A stretch of DNA of 64,000 bases from Euprymna scolopes (Eukaryota). The DNA lies in the NCBI GenBank assembly GCA_053919585.1, contig CM132792.1. One strand, 5' to 3'. The position numbers and the translations under genes were made by a program. Below the pieces are notes generated by a model. The model searched no databases and was not told the DNA's origin. It saw nothing but the letters and a program-made list of their open reading frames with translations. Shown here piece by piece: positions 1 to 49,706 of the stretch (its first letter is position 1; every line of letters begins with the position of its first letter).

Positions 1-483
1 ATATAGCATGTATATGAACAGTTTACGTATATATATAAACGAAGGCTTATGGTAACAAGCATTGATTATACCATTTTGCAAATAAATGCAAATAAATTTA
101 TTTTTTAGTGTATATAGATTTATGGACACCGTGTATTTTAATTTACATATTAACGAAATAATAACTACTATGTGTTTAAATTTCAGAGCCCTTTTACTTT
201 AAGTTCACCGAAACAGCTGATGATCCCGGTTTTCTATTTGATAATTTACGTTTATTTCTTATGCTTCATTTCTTTCGTTCTAATATTGCTCAATTCCGTT
301 TTAATATTCACGCAACTACTAAGTATGCATTATGTTTAACGTAGTGCCCATAGGAATTTAAATTGCACTTTTTATTTTATATTACTTCCATTTTTATTTT
401 TAATAAAATGAACGAAGCTTCTTTAGAACTGTCGACTGTCAACACGACGGTCCTAGGTTCAATCCTTGGCTTGGGAGAGATGC

Positions 484-542
484 TAGTCTAGCGGCACTGA
501 TGAGTTGTGATACAACGAAACAGGACTGTATGTCGATGACTA
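484..542 (+). ncRNA. Type I hammerhead ribozyme, copy 1
   Basis: Core CTGATGA (497-503); stem II GTTGT/ACAAC; GAAA (517-520); stem III ACAG/CTGT; GUA triplet (cut after 530); stem I CGGCA/TGTCG plus distal TAGTC/GACTA. Confidence 0.9.
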
Positions 543-810
543 CAAATATATTTTAAGCCCCCCCCACCTCTTTGGGTAGAGCACTGTCGTAAATAATCTC
601 ACCCGCTACTTAATTGACTGAAAAATGCGAAGCTCGTTGTTTGTTGGTTTCCAAACAGGCGTTTTGAGCACTATAAAAGCAGTGGCGGATGTCTATTTAA
701 ATAGACATTCCGACGAGTTATTTGCGGGCGTCGCTTCTGTGGTCGAGTGGGAGAACTGCCGACTGTCAACACGACGGTTCAAGGTTCAATCGTTGGCTTT
801 GGCGAGATGT

Positions 811-868
811 TAGTCTAGCGGCACTGATGAGTTGTGATACAACGAAACAGGACTGTATGTCGATGACT

Positions 869-869
<1 letters not shown>
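811..869 (+). ncRNA. Type I hammerhead ribozyme, copy 2
   Basis: Identical to copy 1: CTGATGA 824-830, predicted cut after A857. Confidence 0.9.
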
Positions 870-924
<55 letters not shown>

Positions 925-1039
925 CTACTTCATTTAATCACATCAAATAATATACGAATGTATAATTTATGCGTAAACTAAGTATTTACTTCATCAGTGC
1001 TCAATAGATAGGTAGAGCTAGGTAGTAAGTTAGAAGAAT

Positions 1040-1368
1040 ATATATGGCAATTAAGCTACATAGAATATTCCGCGTTTCATGCACACTAGGATTCCTCAGG
1101 TTTATGCGAAGAGTTATTGTAATCTCGCGGTTTTATATACGCATATTCTATTGGATTTTTAGTTAGCCAATCAGTTTCCTAGTTTCCACCGCTCCCTTCC
1201 TAATCAGCCAATGGGCAGGCACTTACAGAAAAAAGGTAAAGTTGACTTTATGTTTCACCCTTCCTTTGTGTGTGCTTTTTTAGCAGGGAGTGTAGATATC
1301 TAGTGAGTTGACCTATTTTAAACCTATATGTAGTTAAATGTGTTTTTTGGTTTTTTTTAGTATTATGT

Positions 1369-4757: not shown

Positions 4758-4823
<66 letters not shown>

Positions 4824-4828
<5 letters not shown>

Positions 4829-5110
4829 GGCATAATCACGTTGAAACACCGGTTCTCGTCAGATCACCGAAGTTAAGCAACGTTGATCCCGGTTAGTATC
4901 AGATGGGTTACCATTTGGGAATGCTAGGCGCTGTATGTACTCTCCGCTTATCTCGGACTTTGTTTTCAGTCGTCCTTTTCTTCACTGGTATTTAACAATG
5001 TCGTCTCAGGAGACGTGTGGTTGGAGATTGCGCACCTCCTGCCACAAAAAATTCACGCGCAAGTAACCCTTCCTGGGTATCCATAGTCTATCCAAGACTA
5101 AAGGAGCCTG
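4824..5110 (+). mobile_element. 5S rRNA-derived SINE (SINE3), head plus body
   Basis: 5S-like ~110-nt head (GATCACCGAAGTTAAGCAACG...) followed by a body homologous to 25670-25835; flanked by (TA)n. Confidence 0.85.
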
Positions 5111-5187
<77 letters not shown>

Positions 5188-13409: not shown

Positions 13410-13989
13410 GAAAACATTGATAAAAAAAACAACTTTTTACTTTAAATTTATCTATTAAATTTGATTTTCATTATGAATTTATTAACAACATTTTTTTTCT
13501 ACGGATTTTTTCAAGAAAACTTGAATTTACAAGTAACGGGAAATCATTTTTAGTGAGCATTTTTATTGCAAATATATCCACTACTACTACTACTAATACT
13601 ACTAATACTAATAATACTAATAATAATACTACTACTAATAATAATAATACTAATAATACTAATAATAATAATAATAATTTACTCGTTGTTGTTATATTAT
13701 GCGATTCAGTGCTCTTGGATCATTACGGTGCATTTTTTTCTCGAAAGAAATATAAAAACTACGAATTAAAGAATATTGCAGAAAGTTCTCCTGAACTTGA
13801 TATTTATGAGCTTTTTTCGGAAACATACTCATGAATATGTAGCGACATAGAAATGCTTATGTAAAACAAATAAAAGGTATATATTACCCTATTTGGCATT
13901 GAGCACTCGTTCATTAACCCCCCTCCCTAACCTTTATTGGTTACTTCGCCTCTGGAAAATATTAACCTACACGGCGCAATAGTTCAACT

Positions 13990-17432: not shown

Positions 17433-17620
17433 ATATAATTATTTCCACAGCCAGACAACGTCGTAGCTCACAACAGCCAAGAAAGCCAACAAACCGGAAG
17501 CCCAAGATTCGAGTTTCGCCCTCATTTGGGCTCATGAGTTAAACACATTCGAACACGGGATTTGAAGCCCGAGCCTCATGTATGCTAGGCGAGCACTCAA
17601 TCAAAAGAACAAACACGCCA
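17433..17620 (-). mobile_element. tRNA-Ala(AGC)-like head fused to a degenerate hammerhead (17501-17543)
   Basis: Minus strand GAGTGCTCGCCTAGCATACATGAGGCTCGGGCTTCAAATCCCG, then CTCATGA-GCCC(AAATGA)GGGC-GAAA-CTCGAATC-TTGGG. Confidence 0.6.
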
Positions 17621-24099: not shown

Positions 24100-24695
24100 T
24101 GGTAAATGTTTTTGTACAGATACTAGTGTTTCGTGATTATGCAATCATCAGTGTAGGAAGTGATGATTATTTCGGGTCTATTTTCAAAGTCACCTTAGGT
24201 TCCCCCATTTTAGTACTCAACGCTTCGCTCAACCAGAATTATCACGTAAAAAGGAAGGGAATTATGTTCTATTTATAATGTCGAGAAAAGCGTCAAATAC
24301 AGAATACGAGTCTATAGTTTTCAGCTACAGACAGAGGAATATTACATTACGCTAAGGTAGACATCTTCTTAATACGCTCTTAAAGAGGCTCAATTCTAGT
24401 TGAAAGGGCTTTATAAGTATTTTATAAAATAATATTAATTATTTTACCAACAGCAGCTAGTGTCCTATGATTATGTAATTATCAGTGTAGGAAGTGATAA
24501 TTACTGCCGGTCGACGGATTCGTATCCAGTCACAAAGTAACCTTTGAGTCTCCCGTTCGGTATTAAACTTATTGGCCAACAAGAATTACCTGTGAAAGGA
24601 AAAAGAATTAAGTTTTCTATTTAATATTGAGACCAATGAACGAATACAGAAAGCTAGGAAAATTCAAGAAGTGTTTAACTGCAGACGATAAATAG
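24100..24695 (-). mobile_element. Old tRNA-headed hammerhead tandem element, ~1.75 units, 334-bp period
   Basis: Core ATCAG ends at 24151 and 24485. Minus strand TACA-CTGATGA..GAAA-CACTAGTA-TC-TGTA. Head end CGAATCCGTCGACCGGCAGTAATTATCAC is homologous to 33826-33855. Confidence 0.7.
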
Positions 24696-25556
24696 AAATA
24701 TGTGTGTAGTAATATATGGAAATTTGCGCATGCGTATGACTCTTTAAATACCTTCCTTTTTTTGTTGTTTTGCTTCCCGATCAAATTTAATAATATTTTG
24801 CAAACCTTTATCGTTTATAACATTTCACAAGAAAATAGGTTGTTAAGAATACATTCTTGCTTACAGGCGAAAGCAATTCGTTTTAGTCATTTATTCTTCG
24901 ATTTCTTTTGCAATAAAATAATAAACAAAGAATCGAGACAAAGGTAAAGATTAGAAAACGATTAAAGCAAATTATAGCTTCTTTCTCAAAAAAGGAGGAC
25001 AAATTCCAATTCAAGAAAATATCTATAACCATATTTCACAAACGCTTGACTATGAGCGGTCTTTATTTATTTATTTATTTATTTTGTTTTTGTTTTTTCT
25101 TTTTGTTCGTTTTTCAAAATAAATGAAACCGTGGCATTTTTGCCAAAATCGCTATTTTATTGGCTTAGGAAATTATTTGCGTCATTATCTCCTTAGAGCT
25201 TAGAGGGATACGAACATTTTAATCGGGAAATTATAGAGAGAATAAATCTAAATACAGAAAATGAAGAAAGAATTTGTTTTGAAATTAGTTTGCTGCCAAC
25301 CGTTTCTTGTTTGTGTCAGTTTGGGAAGACGACGTTTTTTGGCAAAATTGTTGTGCAATTATTCTTAAATTCAGCATTCTTCTATAAATCATCAGACACA
25401 GAAAATTGAACAAAATGTTCTGTAAGAAATACACGTAAAAGCCAACATATACATATATGTATATATTTTAACTTCCTTTAAATTAGACTAATAACTCAAT
25501 ACAGTTAACACACATTATCAAATATTATTACTATAATATTAATTATTATTATCGGA

Positions 25557-25845
25557 TACGGCATAATCACGTTGACACACCGGTTCCCGCTGGATCACCG
25601 AAGTTAAGCAACGTTGAGACTGGTAGTACTAAATGAGTAACAATTTGGGACTTCCAGGTGCTGTATGTGCTCTCGGTATTGTTTCCAGTCGTCCTGGTCT
25701 TCTCCTTGCCACTGGACCCAAACAGTGTCGATTCAGGAGAGGTGTGGTTGAGGATTGCGCAACCCTTGCCTCACAATTACACGCACAACTACCCCTACAG
25801 GGGTATCCTTTGTCTTTCGACACTGAACGGAGGCATCGATCGGTT
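25557..25845 (+). mobile_element. 5S rRNA-derived SINE (SINE3) with structured body
   Basis: 5S-like head 25557-25665; body homologous to 4930-5110; (TTA)n-like tail. Confidence 0.85.
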
Positions 25846-26720: not shown

Positions 26721-26961
26721 TATTTATTTTGGATTTATTTTATCGTGTGTACATTTTGTTGCACCTTTTCAAGGTTTTGAGTGAAAATTATACATCTATA
26801 TCATTAATTACTAAATAATAGAATAATTAAAATTTTTAATGTGAAATCGGATTTTCGACTGTTTCATATTAAAAAGAGAGAGAAAGAGAGAGAGAGACAC
26901 ACACACACTCTCTCTCTCTCTCTCTCACACACACATATATTATTTATTAAAATATAATTAT

Positions 26962-27001
26962 CCACTGACACATGTTTCGTCGTCGACGACTCATCAGATG
27001 G
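26962..27001 (-). ncRNA. Minimal type I hammerhead motif
   Basis: Minus strand CCAT-CTGATGA-GTCGTCGACGAC-GAAA-CATGTG-TC-AGTGG; intact core, GUC triplet, bulged stem I. Confidence 0.65.
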
Positions 27002-27059
27002 CTGAATCTAGCGAGATTCGAAATCGAGATATATATGCTTGTTTAACAATCATTTTAAT

Positions 27060-33327: not shown

Positions 33328-33498
33328 AGTGTGTGTGTGCGCGCGTACGTGCGTGTGTTTTAACTAGCAAAAAGAACATAAGCCTAAAATATATATATAT
33401 ACATATATATTAACTAGCAAAAAGAACATAAGCCTAATATATATATATATATATATACAGAGATGTCTCGTGTCGCGGGGTTCGAATCGTTCGACTGG

Positions 33499-33572
33499 TA
33501 GTAATTGTGACACCCTGCACTGAAGAATCCCGAAGGGATGAAACACTAGTGTCTGTAGGTATTTAATTATTA
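33499..33572 (+). ncRNA. Type I hammerhead ribozyme
   Basis: Stem I CCTGCA/TGTAGG; CTGAAGA (33520-33526); stem II ATCCC/GGGAT; GAAA; palindromic stem III ACACTAGTGT; GUC (cut after 33553); distal stem I TAGTAATTG/TAATTATTA. Confidence 0.92.
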
Positions 33573-33841
33573 TAGTAAAAAAATAATTATGACAGCCCCT
33601 TTAAGAAATACGTTTCTTATAGTTGAGCACTTTCTGTTGAATAAAAGTCGGTCAATTTAGCTCTTATGCGTAGATCGTCGTATAACGACTTGATCACTGT
33701 CTGTCTGACGTAATGAACATTTAAATTAAAATGTTTAAAATTCAACGCTATTTCACACGATTAATGGTAGCCGAATGGATACGGTCTCCGCTAATCGAGC
33801 CAGAGATGTCTCGTGTCGCGGGGTTCGAATCGTTTGACTGG

Positions 33842-33915
33842 TAGTAATTGTGACACCCTGCACTGAAGAATCCCGAAAGGATGAAACACTAGTGTCTGTA
33901 GGTATTTAATTATTA
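33842..33915 (+). ncRNA. Type I hammerhead ribozyme
   Basis: As above; CTGAAGA 33863-33869, stem II ATCC/GGAT, cut after 33896. Confidence 0.92.
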
Positions 33916-35516
33916 TAGTAAAAAAAAATAATTATATATATATACATATATATATATATAATATATATATTATACATAATATAATATATATATATATATA
34001 TATATATACTAAACTAATCTTGACTCGGTAGGTCAGTATATACTAACGCTATCTATGGAATAGTGAGTATATGGAATTAATGTATAGGCGTGATACTCGT
34101 TATGGAATAAAAATATTTGAAAAAAATTACGTGAATGAACCAAGAATATATATATTTGTTACATAGTAGAAACACTTTAGCGAAAGTATATTAAAATGAT
34201 AAAATAGATAGATAAATTTCTATGTGTCGTTGCAACAGTAAAACAGAAAAATTATTAATTGGCGAATGTTTTATCGTTTTAAGGTGCAGCGAACTACGTA
34301 TTATGGTATCCGTTCGATACATAGTAAGGAATTAAAACAGATTGGTCAGCACAATACCACATTATTCTATAAGTATGGCATAAAACACTTATCATAAGTA
34401 AATGGTTATAACTATTGCTTGTTTTTAACATGACAAAGAGTCTAATGTTTCTATGATATTCAAAGTATTGAAAATATTTTCAAGTAATTGCAATGTTTTT
34501 AAACTGCTAATTACAGAATAAAAATAAAATATATTTTAAAATAGTCTAAGTCGTACAAAACCTAAAGTAAATACGTATGGAAATAACGGCTAGTGCGTTT
34601 GGTCACAGTTACTATGAGAAATTCACTCTAAATTATAAACGAGACTGAAAATAGAATTTACCAACTTAATGGTTTTAATTTCTTCCTTTTTTTCTCAAAA
34701 ATGCGATGAGATGTCACTGTATTGTTTATAATAGCAATCAATTATTGCACTATTTTTTGTTGTGTTCCATTTATTAAACAAGATAGAAGTTATTGTGTGT
34801 TGATAGTTAAGCAATGTTTTTTTTTATATTGGAAAAGAATACAAAACCTTTCTGAATAATTATAATTGTCATAAATTACAAAACGTTGTCAGCAAAACAT
34901 ATTATTAACATAATAAAAGATGTCGAAAGGACAAGAAAAAAACAATTTTATCATATTCGTCATTTTAATGAAAAATAAACCTAAAAATAAAAAGGAGATT
35001 TTCATATTCAGTTGAAACAATAGATGAAATATTCGTGTTATCATTACAAAAAAATATTTTTTATCACGTACATCAATATGTTGGATAAATAAATTAAAAA
35101 GGAAAACATGTAAATTGATGAAGTCGTTTTATTTTGCTTTTGCACATGAGAAAAACATATTTGTTTTCTTTGCAAACGATTCAAATTTGCAATGAAAATA
35201 CGAATAAAAATCTTTTTAAACAATTTGGAACGCCAAAAACGTACAATGTTTGTTTTTTTATTGTATTCGGTTTTATTTATATATGTATATTCGTTTTAGA
35301 AATCTTTACAAATATAATGTAGAAATGTAAAGAAAAGGTGATATACGAAAAGCAATGATTCGAAAAATGGCGATGTAAAAAAAAGAAAATTGCAATTATG
35401 GTTTGGGTTTATTTTTTGGGGGACGAGAAATATTAGAAATATTTGCATACGCAAATGTCTGAAAGCGGGAGTTTGAAATCGGAAACACGGTTTCATCGAC
35501 CGGACAAATTTATCTA

Positions 35517-48899: not shown

Positions 48900-49395
48900 T
48901 ATGGCGATTAAGCTACACTGAATATTCTGCGTTTCATCCACTATAGGATTCGTCAGGCTTATGCGCGAATTTTGTGGTTGCTTCTTGTTTTTATATATGT
49001 TGAGGATTTCTAGTGCGCCAATCAGCTTTCTAGTATCCACCGCGCCCCCTCCTATCAGCCAATGGGCATGCATTTTATCGAACAAAGGATCTGTTTTAGA
49101 ACTAGGTTAGTGGTTTACGGTAGATCTTTTCCTTCCTTTTTTATATATATATATAAATATACCTATGTGTACACACATATATGCACATATATATCCACAC
49201 ATATATATATATATATACATATATGTGTGATCGTTTATATGTATTTATGTTTATTTAATTTATTTATTTGTTTGTTTTCTATTGTTATTGTTAGTTTTAA
49301 AGCTATTTTGTATCGCTATCCTAGAGTAAGTTTTATTTTGTGAACACAGTTGTTTGCTATTTCTCGTCTACAGTTTAATAGATTTTGAGGTTCTT
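48900..49395 (-). mobile_element. Penelope-like element 3' end / pseudo-LTR
   Basis: Minus strand LLNCRREIANNCVHKIKLTLG*, then two ATTGG, a GC-rich box, TATATAAAAA and a hammerhead. Confidence 0.75.
48909..48961 (-). ncRNA. Type I hammerhead ribozyme (PLE-associated)
   Basis: TAAGC-CTGACGA-ATCC(TATAGT)GGAT-GAAA-CGCAGAATATTCAGTG-TA-GCTTA; perfect stems I and II, GUA triplet. Confidence 0.85.
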
Positions 49396-49584: not shown

Positions 49585-49692
49585 TACATACACCGACTAG
49601 CCTTCCCAAATGGTCACTCATCTGGTACTGAGCAGACTTATCGTTGCTTAACTTAGGTAATCTGGCGAGAACAGGTGTGTCAATGTGATATA
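49585..49692 (-). mobile_element. 5S-derived SINE head
   Basis: Reverse complement matches the 5S-like head; another very decayed head lies at ~52944-53040 (+). Confidence 0.7.
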
Positions 49693-49706
49693 TACAAACA
49701 CACACT

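What the first reader, a model, noticed from the sequence alone, without database searches (positions are those of the whole stretch)
425..872. tRNA-Asp-headed hammerhead element in partial tandem: candidate Pol III retrozyme with a 327-nt unit
Seen: truncated tRNA head + HHR + ~180-bp spacer + complete tRNA-like head (A/B boxes, GTC loop) + identical HHR. Both HHRs have an intact core, a GUA triplet and a bulged, extended stem I; the heads differ at several positions while the ribozymes do not. Cleavage after 530 and 857 would release a 327-nt monomer. Established: SM-alpha repeats of Schistosoma join Pol III boxes to an HHR, metazoan non-LTR retrozymes are tandem HHR-bounded units that form circular RNAs, and PLEs leave partial tandem repeats. 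Inference: this is a non-coding, self-processing retroelement copied from a circular or multimeric RNA, probably by a PLE reverse transcriptase. I do not know of one described in this lineage.
Basis: partly seen in the sequence, partly recalled or inferred. Interest (0 to 1): 0.92.

Follow-up and report, generated by a model that had tools for sequence, protein, structure and literature searches.

The report
tRNA-linked hammerhead retroelement in (TA)n
This is one copy of a short, non-coding mobile element that joins a tRNA-like piece to a self-cutting hammerhead RNA. It is a real example of a known kind, apparently not yet described in this mollusc (probably cephalopod) lineage, and it was probably copied by a Penelope-like reverse transcriptase.

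Summary
Positions 425-551 and 752-878 are a 127-nt direct repeat 327 nt apart, and each copy ends in an identical type I hammerhead with an intact core, a GUA site and a two-part stem I. The hammerhead fold is supported by covariation across sibling families.

The element belongs to a dispersed family with at least 2,533 first-look candidates. Of 30 copies examined, 27 have a 5'-truncated partial unit with a variable start, then a full unit with a precise junction. In 22 of 30 the 3' end is fixed 21 nt past the cleavage site and runs into (TA)n.

An abundant Penelope-like element in the same genome (806-808 aa, RT plus C-terminal GIY-YIG) also ends in (TA)n. It uses two alternative ends just downstream of a hammerhead-like motif.

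Three things are not shown: self-cleavage, circular RNA and Pol III transcription. PolyA RNA-seq shows no read ends at the cleavage sites. The tRNA-like head has A and B boxes and a GUC loop, but ARAGORN and Rfam do not recognise it.

The closest known relatives are Schistosoma Sm-alpha and the metazoan non-LTR retrozymes. This scan had already found the same kind of element elsewhere in this genome. Verdict: new member of a known kind, moderate interest.

The parts
425..483 (+). 5'-truncated tRNA-like segment of the upstream partial unit. The insertion starts at unit position 222.
   Evidence: Direct repeat with 752-810. The 5' junction was read. Start positions differ between copies.
484..543 (+). 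Hammerhead ribozyme 1, type I: stem I 5' strand 484-496, core 497-503, stem II 504-516, GAAA 517-520, stem III 520-529, A530 at the site, stem I 3' strand 531-542.
   Evidence: Model R1 scores 77.1 bits. Covariation is shown.
531..857 (+). Full 327-nt unit from cleavage site to cleavage site: 21-nt tail segment, body, tRNA-like segment and the hammerhead up to the site.
   Evidence: Used as the query: at least 2,533 first-look candidates, and the 40 scored copies are 87-100% identical over the full length.
552..726 (+). Body (spacer), non-coding. It contains TTGAGCACT at 664-672, a hairpin GTCTATTTAAATAGAC, and TTTT runs at 551-554 and 660-663.
   Evidence: The motif is shared with the bodies of two other hammerhead families in the window.
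727..803 (+). tRNA-like segment: A box 740-750, CTGTCAA loop 763-769 (GTC 765-767), B box 783-792 with a 5-bp T-arm-like stem. The acceptor and D stems are not preserved.
   Evidence: Sequence. No ARAGORN or Rfam tRNA hit. The B box lies 41 nt upstream of the core in both F1 and F2. A sibling family has an Rfam tRNA hit of 26.8 bits at the same place.
811..870 (+). Hammerhead ribozyme 2, identical to ribozyme 1. Core 824-830, cleavage after A857.
858..878 (+). Terminal 21-nt tail (TGTCGATGACTACAAATATAT). This is the fixed 3' end of the insertion and the inferred start site of reverse transcription.
   Evidence: The same end is present in 22 of 30 copies. Five others end at position 12-14.
873..922 (.). 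(TA)n microsatellite abutting the 3' end: either the target or the tail. On its other side lies a minus-strand copy of another hammerhead family (923-1110).

Best explanation
The locus is one old insertion (about 5.6% from the family majority) of a non-autonomous, non-coding retroelement of the non-LTR retrozyme / Sm-alpha kind. Its 327-nt unit consists of a short tail, a body, a degenerate tRNA-derived segment and a type I hammerhead.

Shown: it is a dispersed family. Copies share a fixed 3' end about 21 nt past the hammerhead site that runs into (TA)n. They run back through more than one unit with a precise unit junction and stop at variable 5' positions. The hammerhead fold is kept by compensatory changes across sibling families.

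Inferred: a Penelope-like reverse transcriptase/GIY-YIG endonuclease nicks (TA)n and starts cDNA synthesis at an internal site of an RNA that is continuous over more than one unit. That RNA could be an uncleaved multimer or a ligated circle. The enzyme falls off at variable points, which gives the partial tandem.

Inferred, weaker: the hammerhead acts mainly as a dimer, because its helix III is short and near-palindromic. It would cut multimeric RNA into unit-length pieces that a tRNA ligase could circularise. The tRNA-like A and B boxes would give Pol III-driven transcription.
For: 1. Family and anatomy. There are at least 2,533 first-look candidates, and the 40 scored copies lie on many chromosomes. 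In 27 of 30 copies an upstream partial unit starts anywhere from unit position 42 to 303. In 22 of 30 the 3' end lies at position 21 followed by (TA)n, and the 5' flank is also (TA)n in about half. Wherever an upstream hammerhead is intact, the junction across the cleavage site is exact.
2. The two units of one insertion are as alike as units of different insertions (0.934 against 0.929). This fits copying from one uniform template followed by neutral decay.
3. Hammerhead. The descriptor gives 5 hits against 0.02 expected. On 53 distinct sequences, 13 of 18 pairs change on both sides, 89.6% of cells are paired against 22-45% when slid, and 0 of 500 shuffles reach this. Sibling hammerheads match Rfam type I at 25.6 bits (E 5e-4) and 43.6 bits (above gathering score).
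4. Partner. GIY-YIG gives 15,395 first-look candidates, many with intact 806-808 aa frames carrying RVT_1 plus a C-terminal GIY-YIG. Forty-seven of its 3' regions were read. Where the element ends it runs into (TA)n, either directly after ...TTTCAT or 31 nt further after ...ATCAT, just downstream of a hammerhead-like ...GAAAC motif; a few of the 47 are internal junctions that continue into the element. Two internal RT start sites, an optional tail and AT-rich targets are the published Penelope signature (PMC11167929). A (TA)n bias is published for some PLE clades (PMC8557442).
5. Dimer mode. Helix III plus its loop is a perfect palindrome in F2 and F3, whose minimum-energy dimers are double hammerheads. 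For F1 the double hammerhead is -32.5 against a dimer minimum of -34.3 kcal/mol, while the monomer fold is 3.4 kcal/mol above the minimum.
6. tRNA link. Nearly all model hits in 0.31 Mb carry a T-arm/B-box-like piece just upstream and most end in (TA)n. F3 has an Rfam tRNA hit directly upstream of its hammerhead.
Against: No self-cleavage or circular RNA is shown. In polyA RNA-seq both strands are covered, reads cross the sites, and no read ends pile up at 530/531, 857/858 or at the F2 sites. No sequence similarity was found between F1 and the abundant Penelope-like element, so the partner is inferred from insertion style only. That element's copies are much younger than the F1 copies. A 5S-derived SINE-like copy without a hammerhead also sits between (TA)n runs, so (TA)n targeting is not unique to hammerhead elements here. 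The F1 head is not recognised as a tRNA. A TTTT run at 551-554 would end a Pol III transcript right after the tail. Ten of 27 copies start upstream of any possible Pol III start in the partial unit. The 327-nt unit does not fold better than shuffles (z = -1.15), unlike the rod-like retrozyme circles described in the literature.
Confidence: 0.75

Rival explanations
1. Same retroelement and same Penelope-style copying, but the hammerhead and circles play no part in mobility. The template is a linear, uncleaved read-through or multimer transcript, and the ribozyme is carried along passively or parasitically. The tRNA-like piece would be a relic of an ancestral SINE, not a working promoter.
For: PolyA reads cross the cleavage sites without pile-ups and cover both strands, as expected for passive read-through. 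In vitro, hammerhead mutants of a Penelope element did not affect insertion, and no reads ended at its site (PMC11167929). TTTT follows the F1 tail. The F1 monomer hammerhead fold is not the minimum-energy fold.
Against: The hammerhead helices are kept by compensatory changes across at least five sibling families, and the tRNA-like box keeps its place next to the ribozyme. This argues for selection on source copies. Copies longer than their likely parents need either long tandem masters or a circle. None of the 40 scored F1 loci exceeds about 2.1 units.
Confidence: 0.3
2. An ordinary tRNA-derived SINE moved by a LINE, followed by a local tandem duplication at this locus.
For: A and B boxes are present. 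The genome is rich in tRNA-like and 5S-like repeats.
Against: The partial tandem is not local: 27 of 30 copies on different chromosomes have it, each with its own breakpoint. Copies do not begin at the tRNA-like head. There is no poly(A) or LINE-like tail. Known Ceph-SINEs carry RTE-derived parts and no hammerhead (PMC5786205).
Confidence: 0.05
3. A satellite-like tandem repeat spread at the DNA level, by unequal crossing-over, segmental duplication or extrachromosomal circles, not by reverse transcription.
For: Real tandem arrays of other hammerhead families exist in this genome, with a period of about 410 bp.
Against: F1 loci hold only 1.0-2.1 units. They have one fixed end and one variable end and unrelated flanks on many chromosomes. 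This is the polarity expected from 3'-primed cDNA synthesis with 5' truncation.
Confidence: 0.04

Closest known systems
Sm-alpha / Sj-alpha SINE-like elements of Schistosoma
   Same: A tRNA-derived segment with Pol III-type boxes is joined to a type I hammerhead in a unit of about 330 bp. The elements are high-copy, and both dispersed and multimeric. Sources: PMC2770079, which reports a tRNA-Gln-derived element and more than 38,000 hammerhead hits; unit size and Pol III boxes are from my own knowledge of Ferbeyre et al. 1998, which I could not open.
   Different: The phylum differs (mollusc, probably a cephalopod, against flatworm) and there is no sequence relation. Here the head is GUC-loop (Asp-like) or Ala-like, insertion is tied to (TA)n, and copies are 5'-truncated partial tandems with a fixed internal 3' end. 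Cleavage has been shown for Sm-alpha but not here.
Metazoan non-LTR retrozymes (coral, mussel, axolotl; Cervera and de la Pena 2020, PMC7229834)
   Same: Non-coding repeats of 170-400 bp bounded by type I hammerheads. Helix III is weak and dimeric action is implied. They coexist with Penelope-like elements, which are thought to move them (also bioRxiv 10.64898/2026.07.22.740005).
   Different: Those are described as tandem arrays, from dimers up to 62-mers, that make abundant circular RNA and appear to lack promoters (PMC7761336). F1 loci hold about 1-2 units, carry a tRNA-like box pair, and no circular RNA has been shown.
Penelope-like elements (pLTR, tail, internal RT initiation; PMC11167929, PMC8557442)
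   Same: Partial tandem structure, variable 5' truncation, a fixed 3' end at an internal site just past a hammerhead, alternative 3' ends, and AT-rich or (TA)n targets. An abundant element of this type is in the same genome.
   Different: F1 has no ORF and no detectable sequence similarity to that element. The element's own motif has U in place of C3 (CUUGAAGA...GAAAC), so it is not a canonical hammerhead.
Ceph-SINEs (SepiaSINE, OegopSINE and others)
   Same: tRNA-related short repeats of squids and cuttlefish.
   Different: Ceph-SINEs have a CORE/RTE-derived body and an RTE-type tail, with no hammerhead reported (PMC5786205). F1 shares none of these features.

Membership tests
Hammerhead ribozyme, type I | Conserved core C3-A9 (CUGANGA), G12-A14 (GAA), the A15.1-U16.1 pair and an NUH cleavage triplet. 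| tested here: met
   CUGAUGA, GAAA and GUA are present in both copies.
Hammerhead ribozyme, type I | Three helices around the core, with stems II and III closed by loops and stem I open, supported by covariation. | tested here: met
   13 of 18 pairs change on both sides and 0 of 500 shuffles reach this; slid controls are far lower. Stem III itself never varies.
Hammerhead ribozyme, type I | Score at or above the Rfam gathering threshold. | tested here: not met
   F1 scores only 18.9 and 17.6 bits on Hammerhead_3 against a threshold of 48.5. Sibling F2 scores 25.6 bits on Hammerhead_1 against 34. Sibling F3 scores 43.6 bits, above threshold.
Hammerhead ribozyme, type I | Self-cleavage at the predicted site. 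| tested here: inconclusive
   PolyA RNA-seq shows no read ends at the sites. This library type is poorly suited to the question. A biochemical assay is not possible with these tools.
Non-LTR retrozyme | Non-coding unit of about 170-400 nt bounded by hammerheads, repeated head to tail. | tested here: met
   The unit is 327 nt, has no ORF over 71 aa, and loci hold 1.0-2.1 units. No long F1 arrays were seen.
Non-LTR retrozyme | Expressed as unit-length circular RNA. | tested here: inconclusive
   Only polyA raw reads and contigs were available. A genomic partial tandem hides the back-junction.
Non-LTR retrozyme | Coexists with, and is mobilised by, Penelope-like elements. | tested here: met
   Coexistence and a matching insertion style are shown. 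Mobilisation itself is inferred.
tRNA-derived SINE | A 5' head derived from a tRNA with A and B boxes, at the 5' end of full-length copies. | tested here: not met
   The boxes are present, but there is no tRNA call. Copies do not start at the head: starts are spread from unit position 42 to 303.
tRNA-derived SINE | A 3' tail shared with a partner LINE, or a poly(A) tail. | tested here: not met
   The 3' end is ...ACAAATAT followed by (TA)n. No LINE match was sought genome-wide.
Sm-alpha-like element | A tRNA-derived segment and a hammerhead in one unit of about 330 bp, high-copy, both dispersed and multimeric. | tested here: met
   The resemblance is one of architecture, not of sequence.

The most novel reading that the evidence does not exclude
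The tRNA-like box pair is a working internal Pol III promoter kept next to the hammerhead in at least five families. That would make these retrozymes carry their own promoter. Together they would number on the order of 100,000 copies and account for much of the 'unclassified' repeat fraction, and the supposedly missing SINEs, of decapodiform cephalopod genomes, with circular or multimeric RNA as the template for a (TA)n-specific Penelope-like enzyme.
Probability: 0.25. Interest if true: 0.7.

Novelty: new member of a known kind. Interest (0 to 1): 0.5.

Why it matters
Reviews state that retrozymes seem to lack promoters and depend on read-through transcription (PMC7761336). A family group that keeps tRNA-type boxes beside the ribozyme would give a direct way to test how such RNAs are made. 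It also lies in a lineage where short interspersed repeats are reported as nearly absent and most repeats are unclassified (PMC13218726).

The clean polarity of the copies offers a large natural data set on Penelope-type reverse transcription: a fixed internal 3' end, variable 5' ends beyond one unit, and (TA)n targets shared with an apparently intact Penelope-like element.

If the rough extrapolation to about 10^5 copies holds, hammerhead elements are a notable part of this 5.9-Gb genome. They are also a source of annotation errors, appearing as false tRNA, miRNA and 'cis-regulatory' hits.

Tried and rejected
- ARAGORN on the window and on 19 other copies found no tRNA.
- Rfam at gathering score found no hammerhead or tRNA at the locus. 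Rfam at E<=1 on six loci carrying sibling heads found no tRNA, only spurious miRNA hits on (TA)n.
- Folding the single hammerhead (z = -0.45) and the 327-nt unit (z = -1.15) gave no thermodynamic signal, so the rod-like circle idea gets no support for this copy.
- I looked for systematic differences between the upstream and downstream units, which would point to a heterodimeric master. None were found.
- I looked for sequence similarity between F1 and the abundant Penelope-like element. None was found.
- RNA evidence for cleavage was sought twice and was negative or uninformative.
- I tried to fetch real tRNA genes of this genome to name the head's origin.
- Ferbeyre et al. 1998 is not held.
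- The phage collection gave no match.
- Rejected readings: a Helitron or MITE (no terminal repeats, no fixed 5' end, no CTRR end) and a chance motif.

Full report
**What is in the sequence**

Positions 425-551 and 752-878 form a 127-nt direct repeat, 94% identical and 327 nt apart. Each repeat ends in the same hammerhead. For the second copy the parts are:
- stem I 5' strand 811-823 (TAGTC, a three-base bulge, CGGCA)
- core CUGAUGA 824-830
- stem II GUUGU/ACAAC with loop GAU
- GAAA 844-847
- a 3-bp stem III with loop GGAC
- A857 in a GUA triplet
- stem I 3' strand 858-869 (UGUCG, two bases, GACUA)

Upstream of the second ribozyme lie an A-box match (740-750), a CTGTCAA loop (763-769) and a B-box match inside a 5-bp T-arm-like stem (783-792). 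The first repeat begins inside this segment, at unit position 222. After the second ribozyme come 21 nt identical to the start of the unit, and then (TA)25.

**Is it more than chance?**

The window has 4 core patterns against 0.14 expected. It has 5 matches to a full descriptor (core, three helices, NUH) against 0.02 in 200 shuffles.

Rfam does not call the F1 ribozyme. It gives only 18.9 and 17.6 bits on the type III model and nothing at gathering score. Sibling families in the same window and in fetched loci do match the type I model: 25.6 bits (E 5e-4) at 33857-33902 and 43.6 bits, above the threshold, in L023.

I built a covariance model from seven ribozymes of five families. It found 72 matches in the 0.31 Mb held. 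On the 53 distinct sequences, 13 of 18 pairs show changes on both sides and 89.6% of cells pair. The figure is 22-45% when partners are slid, and no shuffle out of 500 reaches the observed values. That alignment is fitted to the model, which leans towards the structure. The slid controls and the plain compensatory swaps seen by eye (GUUGU/ACAAC, GCUGU/ACAGC, AUCCC/GGGAU, GCCC/GGGC) make the fold secure. Stem III never varies, so it is neither supported nor contradicted.

**The family**

The 327-nt unit finds at least 2,533 first-look candidates in the 5.9-Gb assembly. The 40 that were scored lie on many chromosomes at 87-100% identity. I re-aligned 30 loci:
- 27 have a partial unit upstream of the full one. 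Starts are scattered from unit position 42 to 303, denser close to the full unit, as expected if synthesis stops at random.
- One locus has two full units plus a stub.
- The 3' end is at unit position 21 (...ACAAATATAT) in 22 loci and at position 12-14 in five.
- The 3' end runs into (TA)n in nearly all copies (one, L025, has no TA tail). About half the loci also have (TA)n on the 5' side.
- Wherever the upstream ribozyme is intact, the junction across the cleavage site is exact.

The two units of one insertion are as similar to each other as to units elsewhere (0.934 against 0.929, p = 0.17). They were therefore alike when inserted and decayed afterwards. Copies are 1.6-10% from the majority (median 2.8%), and the window copy is 5.6% away. 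CpG columns take twice their share of changes. The ribozyme is only slightly better kept than the rest.

**How it was most likely copied**

One fixed end and one ragged end point to cDNA synthesis primed at the 3' end with 5' truncation. The fixed end lies inside the unit, and copies run on through the cleavage site for more than one unit. The template must therefore have been continuous over more than a unit and must have been entered at an internal site.

This is the published behaviour of Penelope-like elements: partial tandems, an optional short tail, two adjacent internal start sites and AT-rich targets (PMC11167929). A (TA)n bias is published for some clades (PMC8557442).

The genome holds a very abundant element of this class. 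GIY-YIG gives 15,395 first-look candidates, and many frames of 806-808 aa are open. The frame carries RVT_1 followed by a C-terminal GIY-YIG. I read 47 of its 3' regions. Where the element ends, it does so either at ...TTTCAT or 31 nt further at ...ATCAT, and both ends run into (TA)n. A few of the 47 are internal junctions that continue into the element. Both ends lie just downstream of a hammerhead-like motif ending in GAAAC. F1 ends in the same manner, 28 nt after its GAAAC.

I found no sequence similarity between the two, and the Penelope-like copies are much younger than F1. The pairing is therefore an inference from style, not from a shared tail. A 5S-derived repeat without a ribozyme also sits between (TA)n runs, so (TA)n alone is not diagnostic. 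The partial tandem is.

**Multimer or circle?**

I cannot tell. One argument favours a circle or a few long tandem masters. Each generation is 5'-truncated, so a family whose loci hold 1-2 units could not keep producing copies longer than one unit from such loci. No F1 array longer than about 2.1 units was among the scored loci, but only 40 were scored. Other hammerhead families do form arrays of about 410 bp period.

**Is the ribozyme likely to work?**

The core is intact. As a monomer, the F1 hammerhead fold (-9.8 kcal/mol) is less stable than an alternative fold (-13.2), and the stretch does not fold better than shuffles.

Helix III plus its loop is a perfect palindrome in F2 (ACACUAGUGU) and F3 (ACUCGAGU), and their minimum-energy dimers are the classical double hammerhead. 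In F1 the same stretch (ACAGGACUGU) gives two 4-bp arms around a tandem G-A pair. The double hammerhead is within 1.8 kcal/mol of the dimer minimum and 6 kcal/mol better than two monomers. This matches the weak helix III and dimeric action described for many animal type I hammerheads (PMC7229834, PMC7761336).

In vivo I found no support. In two or three polyA RNA-seq runs the element is covered on both strands, reads cross the sites, many run on into (TA)n, and no ends pile up at the sites of F1 or F2. PolyA libraries are a poor test, and the same negative result was reported for an active Penelope element (PMC11167929).

**The tRNA-like head**

For F1 it is a box-level resemblance. ARAGORN and Rfam see nothing, and the acceptor and D stems do not pair. 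Three things make a tRNA origin likely:
- The T arm and a seven-base loop with U33, GUC and a purine at position 37 are present in better-kept relatives.
- The B box sits 41 nt before the core in both F1 and F2.
- In F3 Rfam does report a tRNA (26.8 bits, E 0.0015, anticodon CGC) ending 10 nt before a hammerhead that passes the gathering score.

Nearly every hit of my model in the held sequence has such a piece just upstream. Whether it drives Pol III is open. Against a simple Pol III life cycle for F1, there is a TTTT at 551-554, directly after the tail, and another at 660-663. In addition, 10 of 27 copies start upstream of where a Pol III transcript of the partial unit could begin. F2, by contrast, has no TTTT in its 343-nt unit.

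**Abundance**

There are 15 non-target insertions in 0.31 Mb. The density ranges from 14 per Mb in Penelope-centred loci to 64 per Mb in the window, which puts the group at the order of 10^5 copies. This is a rough extrapolation from a small and biased sample. The genome-wide first-look counts (900,679 for Rfam type I hammerhead, 506,012 for tRNA) are stated by the tool to be rough.

**Comparison with what is known**

The architecture is that of Schistosoma Sm-alpha/Sj-alpha (PMC2770079) and of the metazoan non-LTR retrozymes (PMC7229834). A recent preprint derives the latter from Penelope pLTRs in vertebrates (10.64898/2026.07.22.740005).

The host is probably a decapodiform cephalopod. That is inferred from the 5.9-Gb size, the 40-odd chromosome-scale contigs and the mollusc-labelled runs that hold the element.

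For that group I found only a passing count of '235 hammerhead 1 ribozymes' in the giant squid (PMC6962438). I also found a statement that cuttlefish have almost no SINEs and mostly unclassified repeats (PMC13218726). The known Ceph-SINEs are of another type (PMC5786205). Repbase and Dfam could not be searched.

Earlier notes of this scan describe the same kind of element at other places of this genome, and their follow-ups reached the same reading. I used them as leads only.

**Verdict**

It is a new member of a known kind, of moderate interest.

Noticed in passing
window 33458-33935 (+): A second family (F2) with the same plan and a 343-nt unit. It reads (TA)n, truncated tRNA-like piece, hammerhead, body, tRNA-like piece (A box TAGCCGAATGG, B box GGTTCGAATCG), hammerhead, a 37-nt tail, then (TA)n. 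It scores 25 bits on Rfam Hammerhead_1. Helix III is a perfect palindrome, and the unit has no TTTT on the plus strand.
   Followed up: partly
window 17494-17551 (-), 26954-27010 (-), 24100-24695 (-): Three more tRNA-like plus hammerhead insertions: a decayed copy of the Ala-like F3 family (core CTCATGA), a copy truncated inside the T arm, and an older two-unit locus with a decayed upstream ribozyme.
   Followed up: partly
window 923-1110 (-) and 48901-48969 (-); L012:3223, L013:1192: Another hammerhead family with core CTGACGA, a long stem III and no obvious tRNA-like piece. Its diverged copy at 923-1110 meets the F1 copy tail to tail at the (TA)n 873-922. The same F1-(TA)n-reverse-copy arrangement recurs in L013, although that F1 insertion has different ends.
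   Followed up: partly
window 664-672, 996-1004 (-), 33623-33631, 13899-13907: The nonamer TTGAGCACT occurs 4 times against 0.31 expected. Three of these lie in the bodies of three different hammerhead families. It may be a shared functional motif or a mark of common descent.
   Followed up: partly
window 4823-5113 (+); also 25554-25669 (+), 49585-49701 (-): 5S rRNA-derived repeats (Rfam 76.6, 53.1 and 39.3 bits). The first is a SINE-like copy of about 290 nt that starts at the 5S 5' end and is flanked on both sides by long (TA)n. It has no hammerhead.
   Followed up: partly
L061 (G000:C3:22983000-22992999) and L032-L065: A very abundant, young Penelope-like element. [quoted passage not shown] It has two alternative 3' ends in (TA)n. 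Near the end is a hammerhead-like motif with U in place of C3 (CUUGAAGA-stem-GAAAC), for which no obvious stem I was found.
   Followed up: partly
G000:C8:10432194-10435515 and G000:C3:89840417-89842627: Tandem arrays of hammerheads that pass the Rfam type I threshold (48-53 bits), with a period of about 410 bp. The second array includes an inversion. These look like classical retrozyme arrays. The sequences could not be fetched.
   Followed up: no
The look-up of sequencing runs, runs X25 and X26: Ribo-depleted RNA runs of a second, coded organism hold 7-14% of the unit's 31-mers. The family, or a close relative of it, therefore exists and is transcribed in another species.
   Followed up: no
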